NCBI GenBank assembly: GCA_946965045.2
Contig: OX337229.1
Span: 6,014,001 to 6,078,000 of the forward strand
Direction: 5' to 3'
DNA length: 64,000 nt
Origin: Epithemia pelagica
Taxonomy: Eukaryota; Protista; Bacillariophyta
A program made the position numbers and the translations under genes. Within the stretch, counting starts at the first letter, position 1. Each line of letters starts with the position of its first letter. The notes beneath the pieces are model-generated. The model saw only the letters and a program-made list of their open reading frames with translations. It was not told where the DNA came from and searched no databases. Shown here piece by piece: positions 2,158 to 11,005 of this stretch.

Positions 2158-3919
2158 CTACAGCGTGTTGAGTTTTCCAGTCGTCATGGGAACGAGAAAG
2201 CTCGTCAAATCGTCGTCTCCCACTCCACCAGCATTACCCGGACCCGAGACGGCTTTGGTGGTTTCCATACTAGTGGGATTGGTTTTGGAGTGTTTGATAT
2301 TTTCCCATTCCACACGCAACAGATTCCACAAGGCTCGTCGAAAGACCTCGAGGAACTGCGTGCACAAGACAAAGGAATCCGAATCCGAAAAGAGTGTGGA
2401 TTTGGCAAATCGGAGCATCCAGGAAAACCTTAAGACACAGTCAATCAACAAAATCAAGGCGGACATGCCAATGCCAAATCGCAATCGTGGTCTCAGCAAG
2501 GAATGGACACAATTGGTTGGGTGGGATGCTGCCTTCCGTGGAGATTGAAGCAATGCCTTGGGTTTGGCGCCCGTGTTGCAAACAACGACCCCAATGGGGT
2601 TTTCTTGCATCATACCCCAATCCATGACAATATCCCAGTAGAGCGCAAAGACGGAATTGACAACCAGCAAAAACAACAAGCGGTTTTCGAGGTCTTCTCC
2701 GGCTCGTTTGGGAATGGTCTGTTGGTAGGCGGAAAGACAGAGAGGAAAGATACTGGTAGAGTATTTCAGGGCATTCCACAAATGAGAAAATCGGTTCCGT
2801 TCTTTTTGGATGCGTCCCACCGAGTACATGATGAGGCATTGACGAGCCCGAATGATATAGGGGACGGCCGCAAAGGCGGAGGGAATGAGAATATTGTGCG
2901 CCGAGGCAGGAACGGGGTCGGGATAGTGCGACGCCATGTGAATGAGCATTCCCCAATCAAAAAATACCTTGGACAAGGAACACATGGCATCGGCATAAAA
3001 AACATCGACAAAGGGAATAAAGCGAGGAGGTACCGTTCCGTCGTTGGTCATGCAATGACATCGCGGATTGATCAATTCAAAGGTACGTTGGAGGACAATA
3101 TAGGTAGCCTTTTGCAGCCATCGATTGCAACGAAAGGGCAACATGATGGAAAGAGAGACCAAGGTATAAAACATGAGCACAGCTCCAATCGTCCCTCCCT
3201 TTATTATTTCAAGCCACCAGCTGCAAGAGAACACAAAAGGCGCAAGCAGGTGGTTCGTGAGGGAACAGGAGGGATAAACTCGGTTCTTCCAAGGATATAG
3301 AGATCCAAAAAGTCATGGTAGTAAAGCGTTATGGGACGTACTAGTAGGTAGAATGAAGAAGGACCAGTAGCAAAGCAGAAAGTCCCACCAACTTTTGCCA
3401 TGAAATGGCATTGTCCGATTCGGAATGAGAATGCGTCAATTCGAGATGCTGTGGTTGTTGTTGGTCGTCTTCGTCCAGGACTTCTTCTTCGTCTTCGTCC
3501 AAAAGTTGAGAGGGTGAACTACTTTGATTGGTGGCTATCCCCGAGCCGGAAGCTGCAGCGAGAAGGGGGACTCCTGTACTTGGTTGTCGTTGTGTGAGTT
3601 GTTGAGACGGTGCCGGTGGTTGCGGCGATGCCGTCGACGTTCGTGGTTGTTGTGAGGAATGAGAGGTGCCTGACCGATGATGAGACACCGACAAGGAAGT
3701 GTCCTTGCTACTTTCTTGTAATTCCAGCTCGGATTCTTCCAGTTTCAGCAAATCATGCTTGAGGACTTTGACGTAATCGATTCGAAACAACCGAAAGAAG
3801 AACAAATTCATCCCCCACAGTCCCACCGAGGCAATCAACACGGTTGGGGATCGCAACATGGCATGTGCAGGGCCTTTGCCGGCTCCAAATATTTCTCCAG
3901 CTTCTTGAGTCGAAGACAT
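2158..3919 (-). CDS. EXS-domain membrane protein (ERD1/XPR1/PHO1 family) with no SPX domain
   Basis: Exons 3919-3342 and 3220-2158, joined in phase by a GT-AG intron. EXS motifs: 'FVDVFYADAMCSLSKVFFD', 'PYIIRARQCL', 'HLWNALKYSTS', 'YWDIVMDWG', 'LRFSW', 'LEVFRRALWNLLRVEWE'. Confidence 0.9.
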
Positions 3920-4292
3920 TTTGATGTAGGATAATGTTTTGTGGAACAATGATGAAGGAGCACAGTGTATGGTTTCTCACCGTTCCCATGGTCGATGTGC
4001 ACAACAAGGATGAAAGAATGCGACAGGGGACATTCTTGTCGGTATCCGCGACTGGATTGTGACTGTGCGCACGCCGACGTGGCGTCTGTCCGTAGTCAGT
4101 AGCTATGAGTTCTTAGGCGTCGCTATCAACCACATAGCACAAACTAAAAATGGCGTTTCCCCTCCTAGAAATGCCACTATACTTTTCAGAACATCCACGA
4201 AATTTCAAATGGTATCAAAAGAACAAACATCATCTATTTCAATTGGTTTCATTTCATGAACGAGGCACAGAGAGATGAACAAATCACGAAAG

Positions 4293-7200
4293 TTACGATA
4301 TTGTCCTTTGCGATCCGTTGATGAGCAATGATCCACCATTCTCGGCAATCGCTCCACACTGGATCGTCACTCCCGTAAAGCGGCCTCGTGCGCATGGCCC
4401 GGTCACGACAATGGCCTTACCCTGACTTCCCTCATTGTCAAAAGAACATTGATAGGCATCTACTCGTCCTTCGTCGCAGACCGTCAACAGATTCTTGGTC
4501 ATTGTTTCGCCCACAGCGTTGAGCTTTGGTCGACGAAAGGTAACTCCTTCCATCCATCCGCCGCGAGCCCGCCAATCCAAGACGGAACCACTCATTTCAA
4601 CAACCACATGACTGGGGTTGTGTTCATCACCAATGAGGCGAATGGGGATCGACACGATCATGTCTTCCGTCACCCAATAATGACCGTCTGCCAGTTCAAT
4701 TGTGTCACCTGCCTTGGCCACTTGCAAGGCGTCCTGTAAGGTCCGGTAATGGTTTCGTTCCATCTTGTTGTCGTCTCGTGTGTAGGCTCCCATTTCCACG
4801 GGGTACACATGCAAGACAAAGGACGGATCTCCCGCCGCTCGACGCCAATGACGACAAGCACGAGCCGCTACGGTTCGTTCCGGAAACGGAAGAAGAAAAG
4901 ACATGATACGAATCAATGGATTCAATGGGAGAGCACTCCATCGCTTTTCGTGAGCCATTTCATATTCTTCCAGTTCCAAGAGGACGCGGGGTTTGTCCCA
5001 AATGGCTTCTCCGGTGTCCACATTGTAGTAAAATTTGGCCTTGTAGCGAGCATCCATTCGTGTTTCCCAGTTTTCACCGGTCAATGTCCTTCGTTTCTTG
5101 GATGCCTTGAGACGAGCGCTTTCCCGTTGATATAGATTCCGATGTCGGGACAAGTCGGTCGGAAGAGGATTCGTTCCGAGCAACTCTCCATCCGCCAGCG
5201 CTTGGTGCTCTTCGTAGGCTTTTTCGCGTTCAATAGCATCAATGTCAATCTCATCATCCTCTTCTTCCTCCTCCTCGGCTTGTCTCTTGTATTCCAGAAC
5301 GGCGTAGAGAGATACAAAGGGATCCACATCATTGCGGAAACGAAACCCATAACGTTCCACGGGAGAGAGGGATGCTTCAATGGCATTCTTGTCCATCCCA
5401 ACTTTGGTTTGCCACGATTCAAACTCTTTTTCCATTTCCTTCTGCTCCGTCTCCTCGTCCATTTGGGATGTTTCCTTCTTTTTGCTTTCTGCCACCGTGT
5501 TGTTGTTGTTGTTGTTGTTGTTGTTGTCATCCCTTTTTGCATCCGCACCACCTTTGGCTTCTGCTCTATCATCAAATTCCTGCAATTCCTCCGATGCTTC
5601 TTTTCGGGCACCCTGCAATGCCGCAACATCATCTGCATCTTCCAACTGAGTCATTGCGTTCTCCATCTGCTCATTGGTAAGGTCTTTCTTCTCATCCACA
5701 GCGGAGGGATCTACTTCTTCTTCTTCTTTTGGAGCTTGTTCCTCTTGCTCGGTCACTCCCAAAATCGCTCGCAGGCCTCCTTTGGTGTACACGTCGCGCA
5801 TCTCCTGGGCCGAGTCGGATGACTCTTTGGACGACAAACGAGCGTTCCGGTCGTGCCGAAAGAGGTGTGATGAGTCAAACTTGCCTCGGTCCATGACCAG
5901 AATGTCCAGATTCTTCTTTTGTTTTGCCTTGATCAATATATTCTCCTCAATCGAGTGTTCCGTCACCAAGCGATACACTGCAATAGCGTCAGTGTCTTGA
6001 GCGACAATCTTCTATTGTTGACATTGCGCACAACTCAGACAACGCAACACAAACACGTACCGTGACAATCTCTTGTTTGACCGATACGGTGGACCCGGTC
6101 CTGTGCTTGTGCATCCATGGCAGGGTTCCAGTCGCTATCATAAAAGCTAAAGAAATATACAAGGTTAGAGCACACCGTGACGCTGGACCACAACACAGTA
6201 ATTGACAGGTTACTCACACCACTGTGTCCGCTCCAATCAAGTTGACTCCAGTCCCGCCACTTCGGGTGCTCAAAATAAAGCAAAAGATCTTGGGGTCATT
6301 GTTGAAACGGTCCATCAAACGTTGGCGTCGGTCCACTCCTGTGCTTCCATCCAGTCGCATATATGTGTGCCCATTCAAGTTTAGAAAAGCCTCTAGAATG
6401 TCCAGCATTTTACTCATTTGAGTAAATATCAAAGTGCGATGGCCGCCACGTTTCAGTTCTCGAAGGAGCTCCGCAAGAGTCTGAAGCTTGCCGGCGTCAA
6501 ACTGGACAAGTTTCTTGTCAGGGAAAAATGACGACAATCGAGCGCGCGCTCGATTGAACGGGCGCATGTATTCCTCCAAAGGTTCCAAAAGCATCTGATC
6601 AATTGGTTTCTGTTGGGTACTGCGTTTTTTGTGAGATGATGGTTTTACACCAGCCCGGGGCACACAAAACACAAACTTTTTTATCATGTCGTCGCACTCT
6701 TCAGCCCTCTGTTGTTGGCTCTTTCGTAGCTCGAGAAGCTGCGCCGGTGTCGATAGGTGATTGAAACTTGAAGTATGATTGCGCTGAATGAAATCCACTC
6801 GCTCAACGAGCCTCTCCGGGAAAGGAAAGCTTCGTGATTGACATCGCCAAGCACTGAGAGTGTTGAGAAAAGCAATTCTACTCGACTTGTCTTCAAACCT
6901 TTCTCTGTGATGACGCTGTTCGAGTTTCACAATATCTTCATTGATACTCATCTTGTCAAGGCCCTCTTTAGCAACATACACGGGTTGAGGAATTGATTTT
7001 CCAAGCGTTCGGAGTTCTTCGGATTCGATCTCATCGTGTTTGTACGCTTTTGCAATGTCTGGGATACCACCACTTCCACACCATAGGGGGACACGAATGG
7101 ACTCGCCAACTGCATCGAACAAGTTGATTGTTTCGCTCAAATAAAACATTGAAGGTAGCAACGGCATACTGACAGGTTCCAGAAGGAATGGTGTAACAAT

Positions 7201-9922
7201 GGATCGCGGTTCAAAGAGGTCGGGATGGTTACAAACTTTTCTGAGTTGCATCAAGACGTTCATCATGCCCAGGAAGTTGCCGCCCTTCCGCAATGCCTTT
7301 CGTGTCGATGACCTAGCCATGAATTCCTCGTACATGAGAAGCTGCCGTCGAGACAGGGAGCATTTGACTATATGTTCATATTTTCCCGGCATCTGTGTCT
7401 CGACATCCTTCTTGAGGCGCCGCAATACAAACGGTCGGATGATGCCATGAAGTCTGCCAATTACATTCTCGTTCTCACCAGTGGTACCTTCTATCATATT
7501 GTTCATTGGGTTTTCAAACCAGAAAGAAAACTCTTTTCGAGAGCGAAATATATAAGGCATCAAGAAATGAAGAAGAGACCATAGTTCCATCAAGCTGAAC
7601 ACATACCAAGGGTCAGAAGCATCCACAATCGACAAAGAACATCTCCTACTTACCTATTTTGAAGTGGGGTTCCTGTCAGTAACAATCGCCGTTGGGTGTT
7701 GAAGTTGATCAGCGTTTGCCATCTTTGACTTTGAAAGTTCTTGATATTCTGAGCCTCATCTAGCACCATGTAGTACCATTTCTTCCGTTTGAACGCAAAA
7801 GCATCCTGAACAGCCAACTGTGAAGACGGGAACCTGGACAAGTTAGTTCCAAAGGCACCTGCCTGCTGGAAACAATGAGCAGCTCACGCACCTGATATGA
7901 AGTTATCACAACATGGTTCCAATTGGTTCTCGTCCAGCCTGTTCTCAGTTCTTTCCTCCTTTTCGCCGATCCATAATAACATAGCACCTTGAGTCCCGGA
8001 CAAAATCGCTTGAACTCAGTCTCCCAATTGACAATCACTGATGTGGGGACAACGATCAGATGTGGGCCCCAAATTCCCTTGTATGCGGCCAAATACGCAA
8101 TCAACGCAATTGTCTGCAAAGTTTTGCCCAAGCCCATCTAACAAACGCGAAAGGCTCTTTTGTTAGCAACGACGAAAACGAAAGCCGAGCCAATTAGCTA
8201 TAATAACTCTCACCTCGTCTGCAAGAATACCATTCAACCTTCTAGATTGCAGTGATATCAGCCAGTTGAGACCAATCTGTTGATATTCACGAAGTTTGAC
8301 CCAGCTAGCCAAGAGGAACGGCCTCGTAGCCAAAGTGCTTTTCGCAAGCTCTGCATACTGCTCAAGCGCCGACAGGGAGCTAGTTCCTACAGTTGCTTCC
8401 CCTTCCTTTCGAGGCCTCTTTGAAGGAGATTCTGCATCCGTAGCCTTTGCTCGTTGTCTTTTCGATCTCCTCCGTGTATCCGTGACCTCAGACCCGTCTT
8501 GAGAATCGTCATGGTCCCCCTCATTCTCTTGACCCGTTGCTTCCGTCATTGCGTCCTCTGAACCAGTTTCGTCCTTCTTCTCAGCCTCTTCGAATGCTCC
8601 TGCGTACATGGCACGAAGTTCTTCGACCGACATTTCATTTTCACTTTTCAACAATGCCAGCTCGTCTTCATACGACATGTCGCGACCCAACCTTTCTTCT
8701 GCTTCGATTGTTGTTTCGTCGTCACGTTCTGTAGGATTCGGCTCAAATTCACCATCTTCCAGATCCTCCTTTGTACTGTCATTCTCAAGCAAGTGATTGG
8801 TACTGGATTCCTCCTGTTGCGTTGCGTCGCCAGCTTCGCCACTATCGTTGTCCTCCTCCTCGTCGTCAACGTTTGTCGATTCCGTTTCGGCTTGCATCCG
8901 AGCATACATATTTCGAAGTTCTTCTACTGGGATTTCATTTTCTTGTTTCAACAAGGCGAGTTCATCTTCGTAGGACATGTCACGACCCAACTTTTCTTCT
9001 GCTTCAATGGTCGTTTCGTCATCCACTCCTCCACCGGGTTCTGGTTCAAACTCGGCATCTTCGCTCTCCTCTGTTGCGCCGTCGTCGTTGTTGTGGGGAA
9101 TACTTGGGTCGGCAGATTCCTCGTTGGACGTATCGTCTTTGGTGGATTCTAATAGGTTGTCTGATGGATTCGTATTCTCCGTTGGAATGGCATATCGTGC
9201 TCGTAGTTCTTCGATCGACAAATTGTTTTCTTCTTCCAGCAAGGCAATTTCTTGCTGGGCCGTCATTTCTTGGGGCAAGCCTTCCTCTTCTTCCATGGTC
9301 GTTTCATCGTCGACCGCCACTCCATCATCCACATATTCCTGAGCATCGTCGTCGTCGTCCTTGTCTTGTACCATGTGTCCCGCCGCCAAGTCATGGACGG
9401 ACCCCATTCGAAAATCGTCCACATCACTGGCATCTCCATCGTCATCGGCATCTTCTCCAGGGTCATTCCTCGTTGTTGTACGTTGGGTGTTGGAAGAGTC
9501 CTTCGTTTGGTCGGGCTTTGTTTCCGATGCAAAATGAACCTGTTTGTTGCTGCGTCGTTCCGGAGGGGCAAGTTTCGCTTGGTCGTCGTCCTTTGGTGGG
9601 TGCGTCTCTCCTGGATCCTCCTCGACCACGAATAAGGTGGGTGGTTCTTGCTGTAAGCGTTCCAACACGAGTTGAATGTCCAGGGTGGCTTCTTCTTGTA
9701 GTTGTTCCAACTCGAGTGGGTCCGCCACAAAGGAGGAGGAATAGGATCCATCCTGCCGGGATGCTCCTTGTGGTTGTGGTACAGAACGCCGTTCCTCTTG
9801 TTCTTCTCGTTCGGCTTGGGCCAGTGTGGTTTCGTCATCTACACTGGAATCCGAACCAGGTTCATAGGAACCATCGGATCCCATGGAATCGTCCGTGGTG
9901 GATTCTCCATAGAGACTTGCAC

Positions 9923-9974
<52 letters not shown>

Positions 9975-11005
9975 GGCAGCAGGAGTGTCTTGTTGTTGTT
10001 CTTGTTGTTCCAATTGCGCCAATCGGGCATAGTCGTGGACTTTGCGTTTCCGTTGTCCTACCGCCAAGGCTTGTTCGATGCGCCATTGATGGAGTTGTTG
10101 GTCATTCTCCTCGTCCTCCTTATCGTGGTCGCCGCCATGCTTGTTCTTGTGGACGCCGACGAGCGATTTGGTGTAGTGTTCGGTTTGTTGGACCAATTTG
10201 ACGAGTTTGCGATTCATGGCCTGGTTTCGTTCTTGATCGTAGGTGACCTTTTGTTGGTAGGTGACAATTTGATCCATTTTGCCCCACCACTTGTTCCTGA
10301 CGAGACGACCCATGCGGGCCGCCAATCGTCGTCGTTTGCTTTCGGCTTGGGTCCAGGCGGCCAAGGCCCGACTGGACCGCGTTTTAAAGTATTGCAAGAC
10401 ACCATTGGACAGTTTGCGACGGCTTTGGAAATGACGTTTGCGTTCCGAAGTAAAATCTGTCGATAACCTATAGAATTGTGGTCGTGTATGTGCAGATTGT
10501 GGGTTGGTGTGTGAAGAAGAAGAAAAACGCCAACAGGAGCAGCGAGACAAAGAAACAATCAAAGCAACAACAACAACAACAACAAGGTTCTCCAGTGTGT
10601 GAGTCATGATTCCCTACAGGCAATGATTCCACGAAATACACCACGAAAAATGACCATGTTTGTGACGGACCATTGCATTTCCTTGAGGACAAAATCCCAA
10701 TGAGTATCGGTCTTGACACGCAAGGGTGCTTGATGCGGCACTAGAAAGGACGTGGTGGTGGTGGTATCAGACTTTTGCTTGTTGTGTTCCGACGACGACG
10801 ACGACGACAGGAGTTTGGTGGCCCGAGGAGCCGCACCGGGTGGGACGGGCAGTGTCATGGTGGCCAATCGTTCCTGAACTTGTGTGTGACGCACCGTCAA
10901 GGATTCATAGTCTCGTTCCAACTCTGCCTTGTCCTCCTCTTTGAATTTCGTGCCCCGGCCTCCTCCCGAGGAAGAGGGAGCCTTGCGCTTTTTGCGGGGA
11001 CTCAT
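4293..11005 (-). CDS. SWR1: SWR1/SRCAP/Domino-type SNF2 chromatin-remodelling ATPase with a C-terminal WW + F-box + beta-helix extension; multi-exon
   Basis: HSA region ('[18 protein letters not shown]'), four acidic 'DDETT..E..L..E..L..EEL' repeats and '[12 protein letters not shown]...[17 protein letters not shown]'. Also '[18 protein letters not shown]', '[10 protein letters not shown]', a split ATPase insertion, '[13 protein letters not shown]', '[17 protein letters not shown]' and '[24 protein letters not shown]'. Start at 11005 (MSPRKKRK) is inferred. Confidence 0.93.
9923..9974. repeat. (GTT/AAC)n microsatellite, about 17 units, encoding poly-Asn in SWR1
   Basis: Perfect trinucleotide run read directly. 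Confidence 0.95.

What the first reader, a model, noticed from the sequence alone, without database searches (positions are those of the whole stretch)
4293..5978. SWR1 remodeller fused in frame to WW + F-box + right-handed beta-helix
Seen: the exon that ends the helicase C-domain ('[14 protein letters not shown]') continues without a stop into a WW domain ('[27 protein letters not shown]') and an F-box ('[16 protein letters not shown]...ARACRHWR'). It then enters a beta-helix start ('[24 protein letters not shown]'). Established: yeast Swr1, plant PIE1 and animal SRCAP/p400 have no F-box (they carry SANT or AT-hooks), and F-box + beta-helix is the FBXO11-type SCF adaptor layout. Inference: this H2A.Z-depositing ATPase may recruit Skp1/Cullin1 directly.
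Basis: partly seen in the sequence, partly recalled or inferred. Interest (0 to 1): 0.75.

Follow-up and report, generated by a model that had tools for sequence, protein, structure and literature searches.

The report
SWR1 remodeller carrying an F-box tail
The only SWR1/SRCAP-type chromatin remodelling ATPase gene of this alga ends, in the same exon and the same mRNA, in a WW + F-box + short beta-helix module; this fusion is conserved across ochrophyte algae and suggests, but does not prove, that the histone H2A.Z exchange machine is wired directly to an SCF ubiquitin ligase.

Summary
A seven-exon, 2048-codon gene on the minus strand (11005-4293) encodes an HSA + split-SNF2 ATPase. Its best solved relatives are SRCAP and yeast Swr1.

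The last exon (5977-4293) runs without a stop from the end of the helicase C-domain, through a 289-residue acidic tail, into three parts:
- a WW domain (Pfam 29.1 bits, cut-off 26.9);
- an F-box-like domain (27.8 bits, cut-off 24.3);
- a right-handed beta-helix of about 155 residues (AF2 pLDDT 93; VIA Z 15.0).

Spliced RNA-like contigs of one run join this exon to the ATPase exons. They show no joint inside it and end about 75 nt after the stop.

The fusion is old, not local. Of 222 module-bearing proteins, 201 carry the SWR1 tail upstream, and no sufficiently complete one lacks it. Named members are diatoms (Odontella, Cyclophora), Aureococcus and Chrysoparadoxa. This is the genome's only SWR1-type gene and its only F-box + beta-helix gene.

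As a whole the module resembles plant SKIP5-like F-box proteins (TM 0.68/0.69) more than FBXO11. It has no UBR finger and no triple CASH domains.

Skp1 docking has only weak computed support (ipSAE 0.60, best control 0.08). SCF recruitment remains an inference. I found no paper describing the fusion. The scan's earlier notes on this genome do not mention it.

The parts
10671..11005 (-). Exon 1: start ATG at 11005-11003 (MSPRKKRK...) and the first half of the HSA domain (..[12 protein letters not shown])
   Evidence: Read from the sequence. The frame is open and the donor is GT. This exon and the 203-nt intron 10670-10468 are inferred; the laid reads do not cover them.
8214..10467 (-). Exon 2: rest of the HSA domain (about 10466-10323), a poly-Asn tract, three 42-aa acidic DDETT repeats, and the start of the SNF2 ATPase
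   Evidence: Pfam HSA match is weak on this piece alone (14.9 bits); orthologues P0203, P0241 and P0261 pass the HSA cut-off. The RNA contig covers 8214-9400.
7892..8137 (-). Exon 3: SNF2 N-lobe (MGLGKTLQ..)
   Evidence: PF00176, 82.7 bits. Spliced joints 8137|8214 and 7817|7892 are seen in run X1.
7654..7817 (-). Exon 4: SNF2 N-lobe, continued
   Evidence: Spliced joints in run X1; frame check.
6218..7594 (-). Exon 5: end of the SNF2 N-lobe, the long insertion of about 240 residues typical of the SWR1/INO80 group, and most of Helicase_C
   Evidence: PF00176 96.8 bits and PF00271 57.2 bits, separated by about 240 residues. Best PDB matches are SRCAP 352 bits and Swr1 275 bits.
6061..6146 (-). 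Exon 6: Helicase_C motif [28 protein letters not shown]
   Evidence: Joints 6146|6218 and 5977|6061 in run X1; sequence.
4293..5977 (-). Exon 7, the last exon: end of Helicase_C, tail, WW, F-box, beta-helix, and stop TAA at 4295-4293
   Evidence: Open frame. RNA-like contigs lie on 5536-5977 (spliced to upstream exons), 5200-5563 and 4218-5149, with no joint inside the exon.
5112..5977 (-). Conserved acidic SWR1 C-terminal tail (289 residues; motifs EFxSWQ..VG.D..IE..L.P.ERY..FR..DPF and [12 protein letters not shown]), with a poly-Asn tract at 5489-5535
   Evidence: All 118 word-search homologues align from this tail onward. A tail HMM hits 201 of 222 module-bearing proteins.
4989..5075 (-). 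WW domain, PRPF40/FBP11-like
   Evidence: PF00397, 29.1 bits against cut-off 26.9. The family profile hits the PRPF40A WW at E 1.2e-6 and TCERG1 at 1.3e-4. Three strands in the AF2 model.
4818..4940 (-). F-box ([36 protein letters not shown])
   Evidence: PF12937, 27.8 bits against cut-off 24.3. It ranks 9th of 18 F-box-like matches in the genome. The profile hits the FBXL5 and SKP2 F-boxes. Helices at model residues 63-93. Skp1 docking: ipSAE 0.60 against 0.08 for the best control.
4296..4754 (-). Short right-handed parallel beta-helix (about 155 residues) with an N-terminal cap helix
   Evidence: AF2 pLDDT mostly above 90. VIA Z 15.0 (6kfn) and 14.3 (1qjv). Foldseek probability 1.0 to pectin methylesterases and PL6 lyases. 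Orthologues pass PF13229.
4218..4292 (-). 3' untranslated region (minimum extent)
   Evidence: The RNA-like contig of run X1 ends at 4218. X1 has no depth over 3894-4090, while the DNA runs cover that stretch.

Best explanation
Shown:
- This is the genome's single SWR1/SRCAP-type ATPase gene: 7 exons, 2048 codons.
- Its C-terminal tail is fused in one exon and one mRNA to a WW + F-box + short right-handed beta-helix module.
- The fusion is ancestral to at least the Ochrophyta and is kept under purifying selection.
- Within the sequences sampled here, the module is never seen detached from SWR1.

Inferred:
- The F-box docks Skp1, so the remodeller's tail acts as a built-in SKIP5/FBXO11-like substrate receptor.
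- That receptor would bring an SCF (Skp1-Cul1-Rbx1) ubiquitin ligase to the nucleosomes where SWR1 exchanges H2A for H2A.Z.
- The beta-helix would be the substrate-binding face.
- The PRPF40/FBP11-type WW domain would be a second docking site for a proline-rich or phospho-Ser-Pro ligand, for example the RNA polymerase II CTD or a transcription or splicing factor.

The substrate is unknown. Candidates are evicted H2A-H2B, H2A.Z itself, a promoter-bound factor, or SWR1 itself.
For: Gene and transcript
- The frame is open through all seven exons and every intron is GT..AG.
- A spliced 3608-nt contig of run X1 joins 5536-5977 to five upstream exons with 0-2 mismatches.
- Further X1 contigs cover 5200-5563 and 4218-5149. 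There are no joints inside the last exon, and no X1 depth at 3894-4090.

SWR1 identity
- PDB ranking is SRCAP 352 bits > Swr1 275 > p400 212 > Ino80 199.
- It is the only gene in the genome that matches across the insertion: 1045 bits for itself against 86 for the next hit.

Domains
- Pfam WW and F-box-like both exceed their cut-offs.
- The AF2 model has pLDDT 93.1 and pTM 0.79.
- The beta-helix scores Z 15.0.

Conservation
- 115 word-search homologues were found, many with Helicase_C and/or SNF2 plus F-box in one protein.
- P0117, P0241 and P0261 hold SNF2 + Helicase_C + F-box + beta-helix in a single protein; P0241 and P0261 also carry HSA and WW.
- MMETSP transcript P0037 spans Helicase_C to the beta-helix.
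- 201 of 222 module proteins carry the SWR1 tail.
- Aureococcus, Chrysoparadoxa, Odontella and Cyclophora are named members.
- Mean majority-residue frequency per column (share of the 63 sequences with the commonest residue) is WW 0.72, F-box 0.65, first half of the beta-helix 0.69.

SCF plausibility
- The genome has two Skp1 genes and several cullins.
- The F-box scores like the other F-boxes of this genome.
- Docking the F-box on the canonical Skp1 gave ipSAE 0.60 against a best control of 0.08, judged 'weak support'. The runs agree in at least 79% of contacts, and partner pLDDT is at least 59. The mark was reached by 51 of 78 solved complexes and 2 of 108 mismatches, but scores of 0.60 or less by only 5 of those 78 solved complexes and by all 4 mismatches that passed (of 180).
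- The nearest structural family, plant SKIP5, binds ASK1 in Y2H and BiFC (PMC11906370).
- In rice, the C-terminal extension of the SWR1 orthologue TED1 promotes assembly of SCF(D3)-D14-D53 (PMC13556982). This is an independent precedent for a SWR1 tail working with an SCF ligase.
Against: - No experiment shows Skp1, Cul1 or ubiquitin-ligase activity on this protein.
- The docking score falls in the band the tool calls more often wrong than right unless the prior was high, and Skp1/F-box complexes may be recalled from memory.
- Skp1 had to be given as its third exon only (131 residues), because spliced sequences were not to be joined.
- The canonical Leu-Pro of the F-box is not among the columns at least 90% conserved.
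- The contigs leave a 50-nt assembly hole at 5150-5199. It is also broken in the DNA runs. The RNA-like contigs cannot exclude an additional internal transcript.
- Some F-box proteins use Skp1 without a cullin.
Confidence: 0.55

Rival explanations
1. Skp1-independent module. The F-box-like helices have become a structural adaptor. The WW + beta-helix tail would then simply recruit SWR1 to a partner (RNA polymerase II CTD, a histone dimer, a complex subunit) without any ubiquitin ligase.
For: - The F-box scores only just above the Pfam cut-off (27.8 against 24.3).
- PF00646 is below its cut-off (15.6 against 20.5).
- The Leu-Pro pair is not among the near-invariant columns.
- Docking support is only weak.
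- The WW is of a CTD- or proline-rich-binding type.
Against: - The F-box core residues (L66, M70, L73, P75, P77, C86, W89) are at least 90% conserved across the 63 modules of alignment A1.
- The docking controls scored 0.00-0.08.
- The closest structural family, SKIP5, is a proven ASK1 binder (PMC11906370).
Confidence: 0.22
2. Skp1 is bound but no cullin ligase forms. Skp1 would be a stable non-SCF subunit or chaperone of the SWR1 complex, as in yeast RAVE, Rcy1 or Ctf13/CBF3. Alternatively the F-box serves only to make SWR1 itself unstable.
For: Non-SCF Skp1/F-box complexes are established in yeast (my knowledge). Nothing here tests Cul1. concerns Skp1 only.
Against: The F-box is followed by a well-conserved beta-helix, as in the receptor-type F-box proteins FBXO11, FBXO10 and SKIP5. 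This fits substrate presentation better than a mere anchor.
Confidence: 0.18
3. Gene-model artefact. Two neighbouring genes, SWR1 and an F-box protein, only appear fused because the frame happens to stay open. Alternatively the module is normally expressed from its own internal promoter.
For: - RNA evidence is from assembled contigs, which cannot show transcript starts.
- There is a 50-nt contig break at 5150-5199.
- The 3' contigs have about twice the k-mer depth of the upstream contig (30.8-36.3 against 16.4). The tool warns that this depth is not interpretable.
Against: - The 289-codon linker is open and conserved as protein in all homologues.
- Single ORFs in intron-poor relatives hold SNF2 + Helicase_C + F-box + beta-helix.
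- An MMETSP transcript of another species spans the junction.
- No module protein with at least 60 upstream residues lacks the SWR1 tail.
- The contig break is also present in the DNA runs.
Confidence: 0.04

Closest known systems
Swr1 (yeast) / SRCAP (human) / PIE1 and TED1 (plants): catalytic subunits of the H2A.Z-depositing SWR1 complex
   Same: - HSA domain and a split SNF2 ATPase with a long insertion.
- Best sequence matches among solved structures.
- Single orthologue in the genome.
- About 2000 residues, like rice TED1.
- TED1's C-terminal extension also cooperates with an SCF ligase (PMC13556982).
   Different: - None of these carries an F-box, a WW domain or a beta-helix. They have SANT, AT-hooks or other tails (my knowledge).
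- In rice the SCF link works through binding of D14 and D53, not through a built-in F-box.
Plant SKIP5 (SKP1-interacting partner 5) and SKIP5-like F-box proteins, about 260-275 aa
   Same: - An F-box followed directly by a short right-handed beta-helix.
- Best whole-module structural match: TM 0.68/0.69, 210 residues aligned, rmsd 2.8.
- Top language-model feature hits, 0.91-0.92.
- AtSKIP5 binds ASK1 (PMC11906370).
   Different: - SKIP5 is a free-standing small protein without a WW domain.
- No sequence-level link was recovered by the word-based profile search, so homology as opposed to convergence is not settled.
FBXO11 / FBXO10 (animal F-box proteins with CASH beta-helix domains)
   Same: F-box followed by a right-handed beta-helix used as substrate receptor. 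Structural match TM 0.57 by query for FBXO11 and 0.49 for FBXO10; feature score 0.85-0.89.
   Different: - FBXO11 is about 900 aa with three CASH domains and a C-terminal UBR zinc finger (my knowledge).
- Here there is one helix of about 155 residues and nothing after it. TM by target is only 0.19.
Motor proteins with built-in E3 parts: Fbh1 (F-box + UvrD-type helicase) and the Rad5/HLTF/SHPRH/Rad16 group (SNF2 ATPase with an embedded RING)
   Same: A DNA-translocating ATPase and a ubiquitin-ligase element in one polypeptide (my knowledge). This is the conceptual precedent for the proposed mechanism.
   Different: - Different ATPase families and different E3 elements.
- None is a histone-exchange enzyme.
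- No sequence relation was tested here.

Membership tests
SWR1/SRCAP subfamily of SNF2 ATPases | Closest to SWR1/SRCAP rather than INO80, p400 or other SNF2 subfamilies | tested here: met
   SRCAP 352 bits, Swr1 275, p400 212, Ino80 199, Snf2/Sth1 about 175.
SWR1/SRCAP subfamily of SNF2 ATPases | ATPase lobes split by a long insertion | tested here: met
   PF00176 ends at residue 140 and PF00271 starts at residue 383 of the same exon.
SWR1/SRCAP subfamily of SNF2 ATPases | N-terminal HSA domain | tested here: met
   The HSA domain is split by an intron here (14.9 bits on exon 2 alone; [15 protein letters not shown] in exon 1). Orthologues P0203 (45.5 bits) and P0261 (51.3 bits) pass the cut-off.
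SWR1/SRCAP subfamily of SNF2 ATPases | H2A to H2A.Z exchange activity within a SWR1 complex | not testable with these tools
   Context only: YL1_C-domain genes are present.
F-box proteins (SCF substrate receptors) | F-box HMM above the curated threshold | tested here: met
   PF12937, 27.8 bits against 24.3; 32.4 bits in the genome scan. PF00646 is below its cut-off.
F-box proteins (SCF substrate receptors) | Binds Skp1 | tested here: inconclusive
   ipSAE 0.60 against a best control of 0.08, verdict 'weak support'. No experiment.
F-box proteins (SCF substrate receptors) | Assembles with Cul1/Rbx1 and ubiquitylates a substrate | not testable with these tools
   Cullin genes exist in the genome. 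Nothing more is known.
WW domain | HMM above cut-off; two Trp about 22 residues apart and a terminal Pro | tested here: met
   PF00397, 29.1 bits against 26.9. W15, W38 and P41 of the module are at least 90% conserved. Three-stranded sheet in the model.
Right-handed parallel beta-helix (pectin-lyase fold) | Fold match to solved beta-helices | tested here: met
   VIA Z 15.0, rmsd 2.3, 145 aligned (6kfn); Z 14.3 (1qjv). Foldseek probability 1.0. Pfam is below threshold in this protein but passes in orthologues.
FBXO11-type F-box proteins | Three CASH (beta-helix) domains | tested here: not met
   There is a single helix of about 155 residues that ends at the stop codon. No remnant lies downstream.
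FBXO11-type F-box proteins | C-terminal UBR-type zinc finger | tested here: not met
   No such Pfam hit in this protein or in the long-form orthologues.
SKIP5-like F-box proteins | F-box directly followed by one short beta-helix, about 270 aa in total | tested here: met
   row 1: TM 0.68/0.69 over query residues 4-272.
SKIP5-like F-box proteins | Detectable sequence homology to SKIP5 | tested here: inconclusive
   The profile word search returned only in-family hits. The exhaustive profile search lists only its best 150, all in-family or WW-repeat proteins.

The most novel reading that the evidence does not exclude
In ochrophyte algae (diatoms, pelagophytes, PX clade) the SWR1 complex is a bifunctional machine. 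The catalytic subunit would itself be the substrate receptor of an SCF ubiquitin ligase, so that H2A.Z deposition and ubiquitylation of a chromatin-bound target happen in one complex, guided by a CTD- or proline-rich-binding WW domain. Candidate targets are evicted H2A-H2B, H2A.Z, RNA polymerase II or a promoter factor.
Probability: 0.35. Interest if true: 0.8.

Novelty: new variant of a known kind. Interest (0 to 1): 0.62.

Why it matters
SWR1/SRCAP is one of the most conserved chromatin machines. Its catalytic subunit is not known to carry a ubiquitin-ligase element in yeast, plants or animals.

A hard-wired F-box receptor on the only SWR1 of a whole algal phylum makes a concrete hypothesis testable: that histone-variant exchange is coupled to SCF ubiquitylation. 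Diatoms are major marine primary producers, and some are genetically tractable. A 2026 rice study reports that the C-terminal extension of the plant SWR1 orthologue promotes SCF(D3) action (PMC13556982). This suggests that SWR1 tails may have been recruited to SCF pathways more than once.

The finding also corrects annotation. In many assemblies this gene is split into a 'helicase' and an 'F-box or hypothetical protein'.

Tried and rejected
- **Longer beta-helix downstream of the stop.** tblastn with the tails of long-form orthologues found nothing in 3950-4293. The closest relatives, P0002 and P0003, end at the same place. A midpoint-rooted tree puts long tails in the outgroups, so the short form looks derived.
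- **Free-standing copies of the module.** The own-genome protein search found none. No other F-box sits next to a Pfam beta-helix on the same strand. Among 222 module proteins, the 21 without a tail match have fewer than 60 upstream residues, or in one case are WW-repeat noise.
- **Sequence link to SKIP5 or FBXO11.** The word-based profile search did not recover one.
- **Organism names.** Most hits are unnamed. The taxon of the 2198-aa UniParc protein P0261 and of run SRR15309574 could not be found, so I cannot say whether non-photosynthetic stramenopiles share the fusion.
- **Literature.** Four searches for SWR1/SNF2 with F-box in diatoms or stramenopiles found no paper on the fusion. The eukaryote-wide chromatin survey 10.1101/2021.11.30.470311 has no occurrence of 'F-box' in its main text.
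- **NCBIfam.** Nothing useful.
- **Skp1 docking.** It gave only 'weak support' (ipSAE 0.60, best control 0.08) and is not counted as evidence of binding.
- **Joined sequence.** The spliced protein was never joined or searched as one sequence. Skp1 was therefore given as its third exon only.
Full report
**1. What is in the sequence**

The region 4293-5978 is a 561-codon open frame on the minus strand.

Pfam places three things in it:
- a WW domain at ORF residues 302-330, 29.1 bits against a curated cut-off of 26.9;
- an F-box-like domain at residues 347-387, 27.8 bits against 24.3;
- only a weak beta-helix signal (DUF1565, E 0.038).

NCBIfam adds a weak NosD match over residues 414-480. The frame begins with the last helicase motif ([15 protein letters not shown]). 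Between that motif and the WW domain lie 289 acidic residues without a stop. By my own estimate, (61/64)^289 is about 1e-6, so chance does not explain this.

**2. Gene model**

Upstream open frames carry the HSA domain, the SNF2 N-lobe, a long insertion and Helicase_C. I derived a seven-exon model from the sequence and from the spliced contigs described below:
- 11005-10671
- 10467-8214
- 8137-7892
- 7817-7654
- 7594-6218
- 6146-6061
- 5977-4293

All six introns are GT..AG. Checked exon by exon with split codons, the frame stays open for 2048 codons up to the TAA at 4295-4293. The first intron (10670-10468) is inferred from the sequence only. I did not build or search a joined protein; every search was done exon by exon by reference.

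**3. Transcript evidence**

Four public runs from one study hold this stretch. Laid on 3500-9400, runs X2-X4 behave as DNA, because their contigs include introns and intergenic sequence.

Run X1 behaves as RNA:
- One 3608-nt contig with 0-2 mismatches lies on 5536-5977, 6061-6146, 6218-7594, 7654-7817, 7892-8137 and 8214-9400. It skips five segments whose ends read GT..AG on the minus strand.
- Further X1 contigs lie on 5200-5563 and 4218-5149.
- No joint falls inside the last exon.
- X1 has no depth at 3894-4090, whereas the DNA runs cover it. The transcript therefore ends at least 75 nt after the stop and before the next gene.

The only hole, 5150-5199, is also a contig break in the DNA runs, so it is an assembly bubble. 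That condition is not met.

Contigs cannot show transcript starts, so an additional internal transcript cannot be excluded.

**4. The ATPase is SWR1-type and is the only one**

Exon 5 matches human SRCAP best (352 bits, E 5.5e-104). Yeast Swr1 follows (275), then p400 (212) and Ino80 (199). In the organism's own 60.5-Mb genome, no second locus matches across the insertion: the gene itself scores 1045 bits, and the next hit scores 86 bits over motor motifs only. YL1_C-domain genes are present. H2A.Z exchange is therefore inferred from orthology, not shown.

**5. The fusion is conserved and old**

- A word search with ORF residues 290-561 returned 115 proteins. Many hold Helicase_C and/or SNF2 together with F-box-like in one polypeptide.
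- An MMETSP transcript of another species (P0037) runs from Helicase_C through the WW and F-box into a longer beta-helix. Its cluster mate P0117 (1279 aa) has SNF2 + Helicase_C + F-box + Beta_helix in one uninterrupted ORF.
- An exhaustive profile search found 148 representatives at E of 1e-30 or better.
- Long members show the full architecture. P0241 (1643 aa) and P0261 (2198 aa, a UniParc entry) both have HSA, SNF2, Helicase_C, WW, F-box and beta-helix.
- Of 222 proteins with the F-box part of the module, 201 have a match to the SWR1 tail upstream. The other 21 have fewer than 60 upstream residues, or in one case are a WW-repeat protein. No free-standing version was seen.
- Named members are Odontella and Cyclophora (diatoms), Aureococcus anophagefferens (XP_009041253.1; Pfam) and Chrysoparadoxa australica (CAM9514029.1, PX clade).

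This range spans the Ochrophyta. Whether other stramenopiles share the fusion could not be settled.

Mean majority-residue frequency per column across 63 modules is 0.72 for the WW, 0.65 for the F-box and 0.69 for the first half of the beta-helix, which points to constraint.

**6. Structure of the module**

AlphaFold2 with the 63-sequence alignment gave pLDDT 93.1 and pTM 0.79. The model shows, in order:
- a short helix;
- a three-stranded WW;
- a long connecting helix;
- the F-box helices;
- a right-handed beta-helix.

VIA-align gives Z 15.0 (alginate lyase 6kfn) and 14.3 (pectin methylesterase 1qjv) over model residues 94-272. Foldseek agrees.

The beta-helix here is short, about 155 residues. 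Relatives outside the window's subclade carry 70-350 further residues. The window has no remnant downstream. On a midpoint-rooted tree the short form is derived.

**7. Which known family it resembles**

A structural search of the ESM Atlas gave the following:

| Match | TM by query / by target | Aligned residues |
|---|---|---|
| Plant F-box cluster, 270 aa | 0.68 / 0.69 | 210 (rmsd 2.8) |
| FBXO11 | 0.57 / 0.19 | 189 |
| SHCBP1 | 0.53 / 0.24 | 156 |
| FBXO10 | 0.49 / 0.15 | 148 |

The best row covers the whole module. It appears to be the third of the three SKIP5-like clusters that the feature search ranked first, at 0.91-0.92; it has the same name, size and membership. AtSKIP5 is a 274-aa F-box protein that binds ASK1 (PMC11906370). 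So 'FBXO11-type' is right in layout, but the module lacks FBXO11's defining triple CASH domains and UBR finger. 'SKIP5-like' is the closer description. No sequence-level link was recovered.

The family profile places the WW domain next to PRPF40A (E 1.2e-6), TCERG1, Prp40 and Pin1. These are nuclear WW domains that, from my knowledge, bind proline-rich motifs and the phosphorylated RNA polymerase II CTD. The FYYN/FWYN aromatic run fits the FBP11/PRPF40 class rather than the PPxY class; this is my own reading of the sequence.

**8. Does it recruit SCF?**

- The genome has a canonical three-exon Skp1, a second Skp1-like gene and several cullins.
- The window's F-box scores mid-field among the 18 F-box-like matches of the genome.
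- It reads LP..LI.IM.FL.P.PER......C..W..AA, which parallels the SKP2 F-box (my reading; PDB hits).
- Docking ORF residues 335-410 on the third exon of Skp1 gave ipSAE 0.58-0.60 against controls of 0.00-0.08. The verdict was 'weak support'. The runs agree in at least 79% of contacts and partner pLDDT is at least 59.
- The tool's calibration: 51 of 78 solved complexes and 2 of 108 mismatches reach the mark. Scores of 0.60 or less were seen in only 5 of those 78 solved complexes and in all 4 mismatches that passed (of 180). Known complex types may also be recalled from memory.

I treat this as compatible with Skp1 binding, not as evidence for it. No tool here can address Cul1 or substrates.

**9. 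Precedent and novelty**

Four literature searches found no paper on an F-box-bearing SWR1. The broad chromatin-evolution survey has no occurrence of 'F-box' in its main text.

A 2026 paper shows that the C-terminal extension of rice TED1, the PIE1/SWR1 orthologue, promotes assembly of SCF(D3)-D14-D53 and degradation of D53 (PMC13556982). This is a functional parallel without a built-in F-box. From my knowledge, Fbh1 and the RING-bearing SNF2 proteins (Rad5, HLTF, SHPRH) are precedents for motor-E3 fusions.

I therefore rate this a new variant of a known kind. It is real, conserved and apparently undescribed, but its mechanism is inferred.

**10. Verdict**

| Claim | My confidence |
|---|---|
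| Real single-gene fusion | about 0.95 |
| The F-box binds Skp1 | about 0.6-0.65 |
| An active SCF ligase forms on SWR1 | about 0.35-0.4 |

Noticed in passing
window 9311-9183, 9023-8895, 8723-8595 (minus strand); partial copy at 9839-9711: Exon 2 of the SWR1 gene holds three full acidic repeats of about 42 aa (DDETT[IM]E.EE..G..M...E[IL]ALL..EN..[SP][IV]EELR..YA), plus a fourth DDETT start. It looks like a triplication of the acidic motif that precedes the ATPase in SWR1/SRCAP proteins. From memory, that region is implicated in histone-dimer binding.
   Followed up: partly
window 5489-5535 and 9924-9974 (minus strand): There are (AAC)n poly-asparagine tracts inside the coding sequence. Contigs of the public runs show 12-nt gaps over stretches that include the first tract, so its length may vary. 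Assemblies break at that tract.
   Followed up: partly
window 3949-2158 (minus strand): The next gene downstream is an EXS-family (ERD1/XPR1/SYG1-type) membrane protein (PF03124, 181 bits on the 2158-3234 frame). It starts about 370 bp after the SWR1 stop and has at least one intron.
   Followed up: no
run X1 on window 3500-9400: A public run whose kind is not on record ('?') is evidently RNA or cDNA. Its contigs are spliced at GT..AG introns and lack the intergenic stretch. The other three runs of the same study are DNA and differ from the window at many sites, so they come from another haplotype or strain.
   Followed up: yes
L002:1138-1641 (G000 C3, about 2219835-2220338): A second, intronless Skp1-like gene (167 aa) lacks the canonical C-terminal WCEE helix of the main Skp1 (L001). 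It could be a specialised Skp1 paralogue.
   Followed up: no
homologues P0093, P0105, P0065 and about 40 others with 51% query coverage: In many relatives the gene has an intron right after the conserved 'PGDTI' of the beta-helix cap. Prokaryote-style gene calling therefore truncates or reads through the protein there. The window's lineage has no intron at that point.
   Followed up: partly
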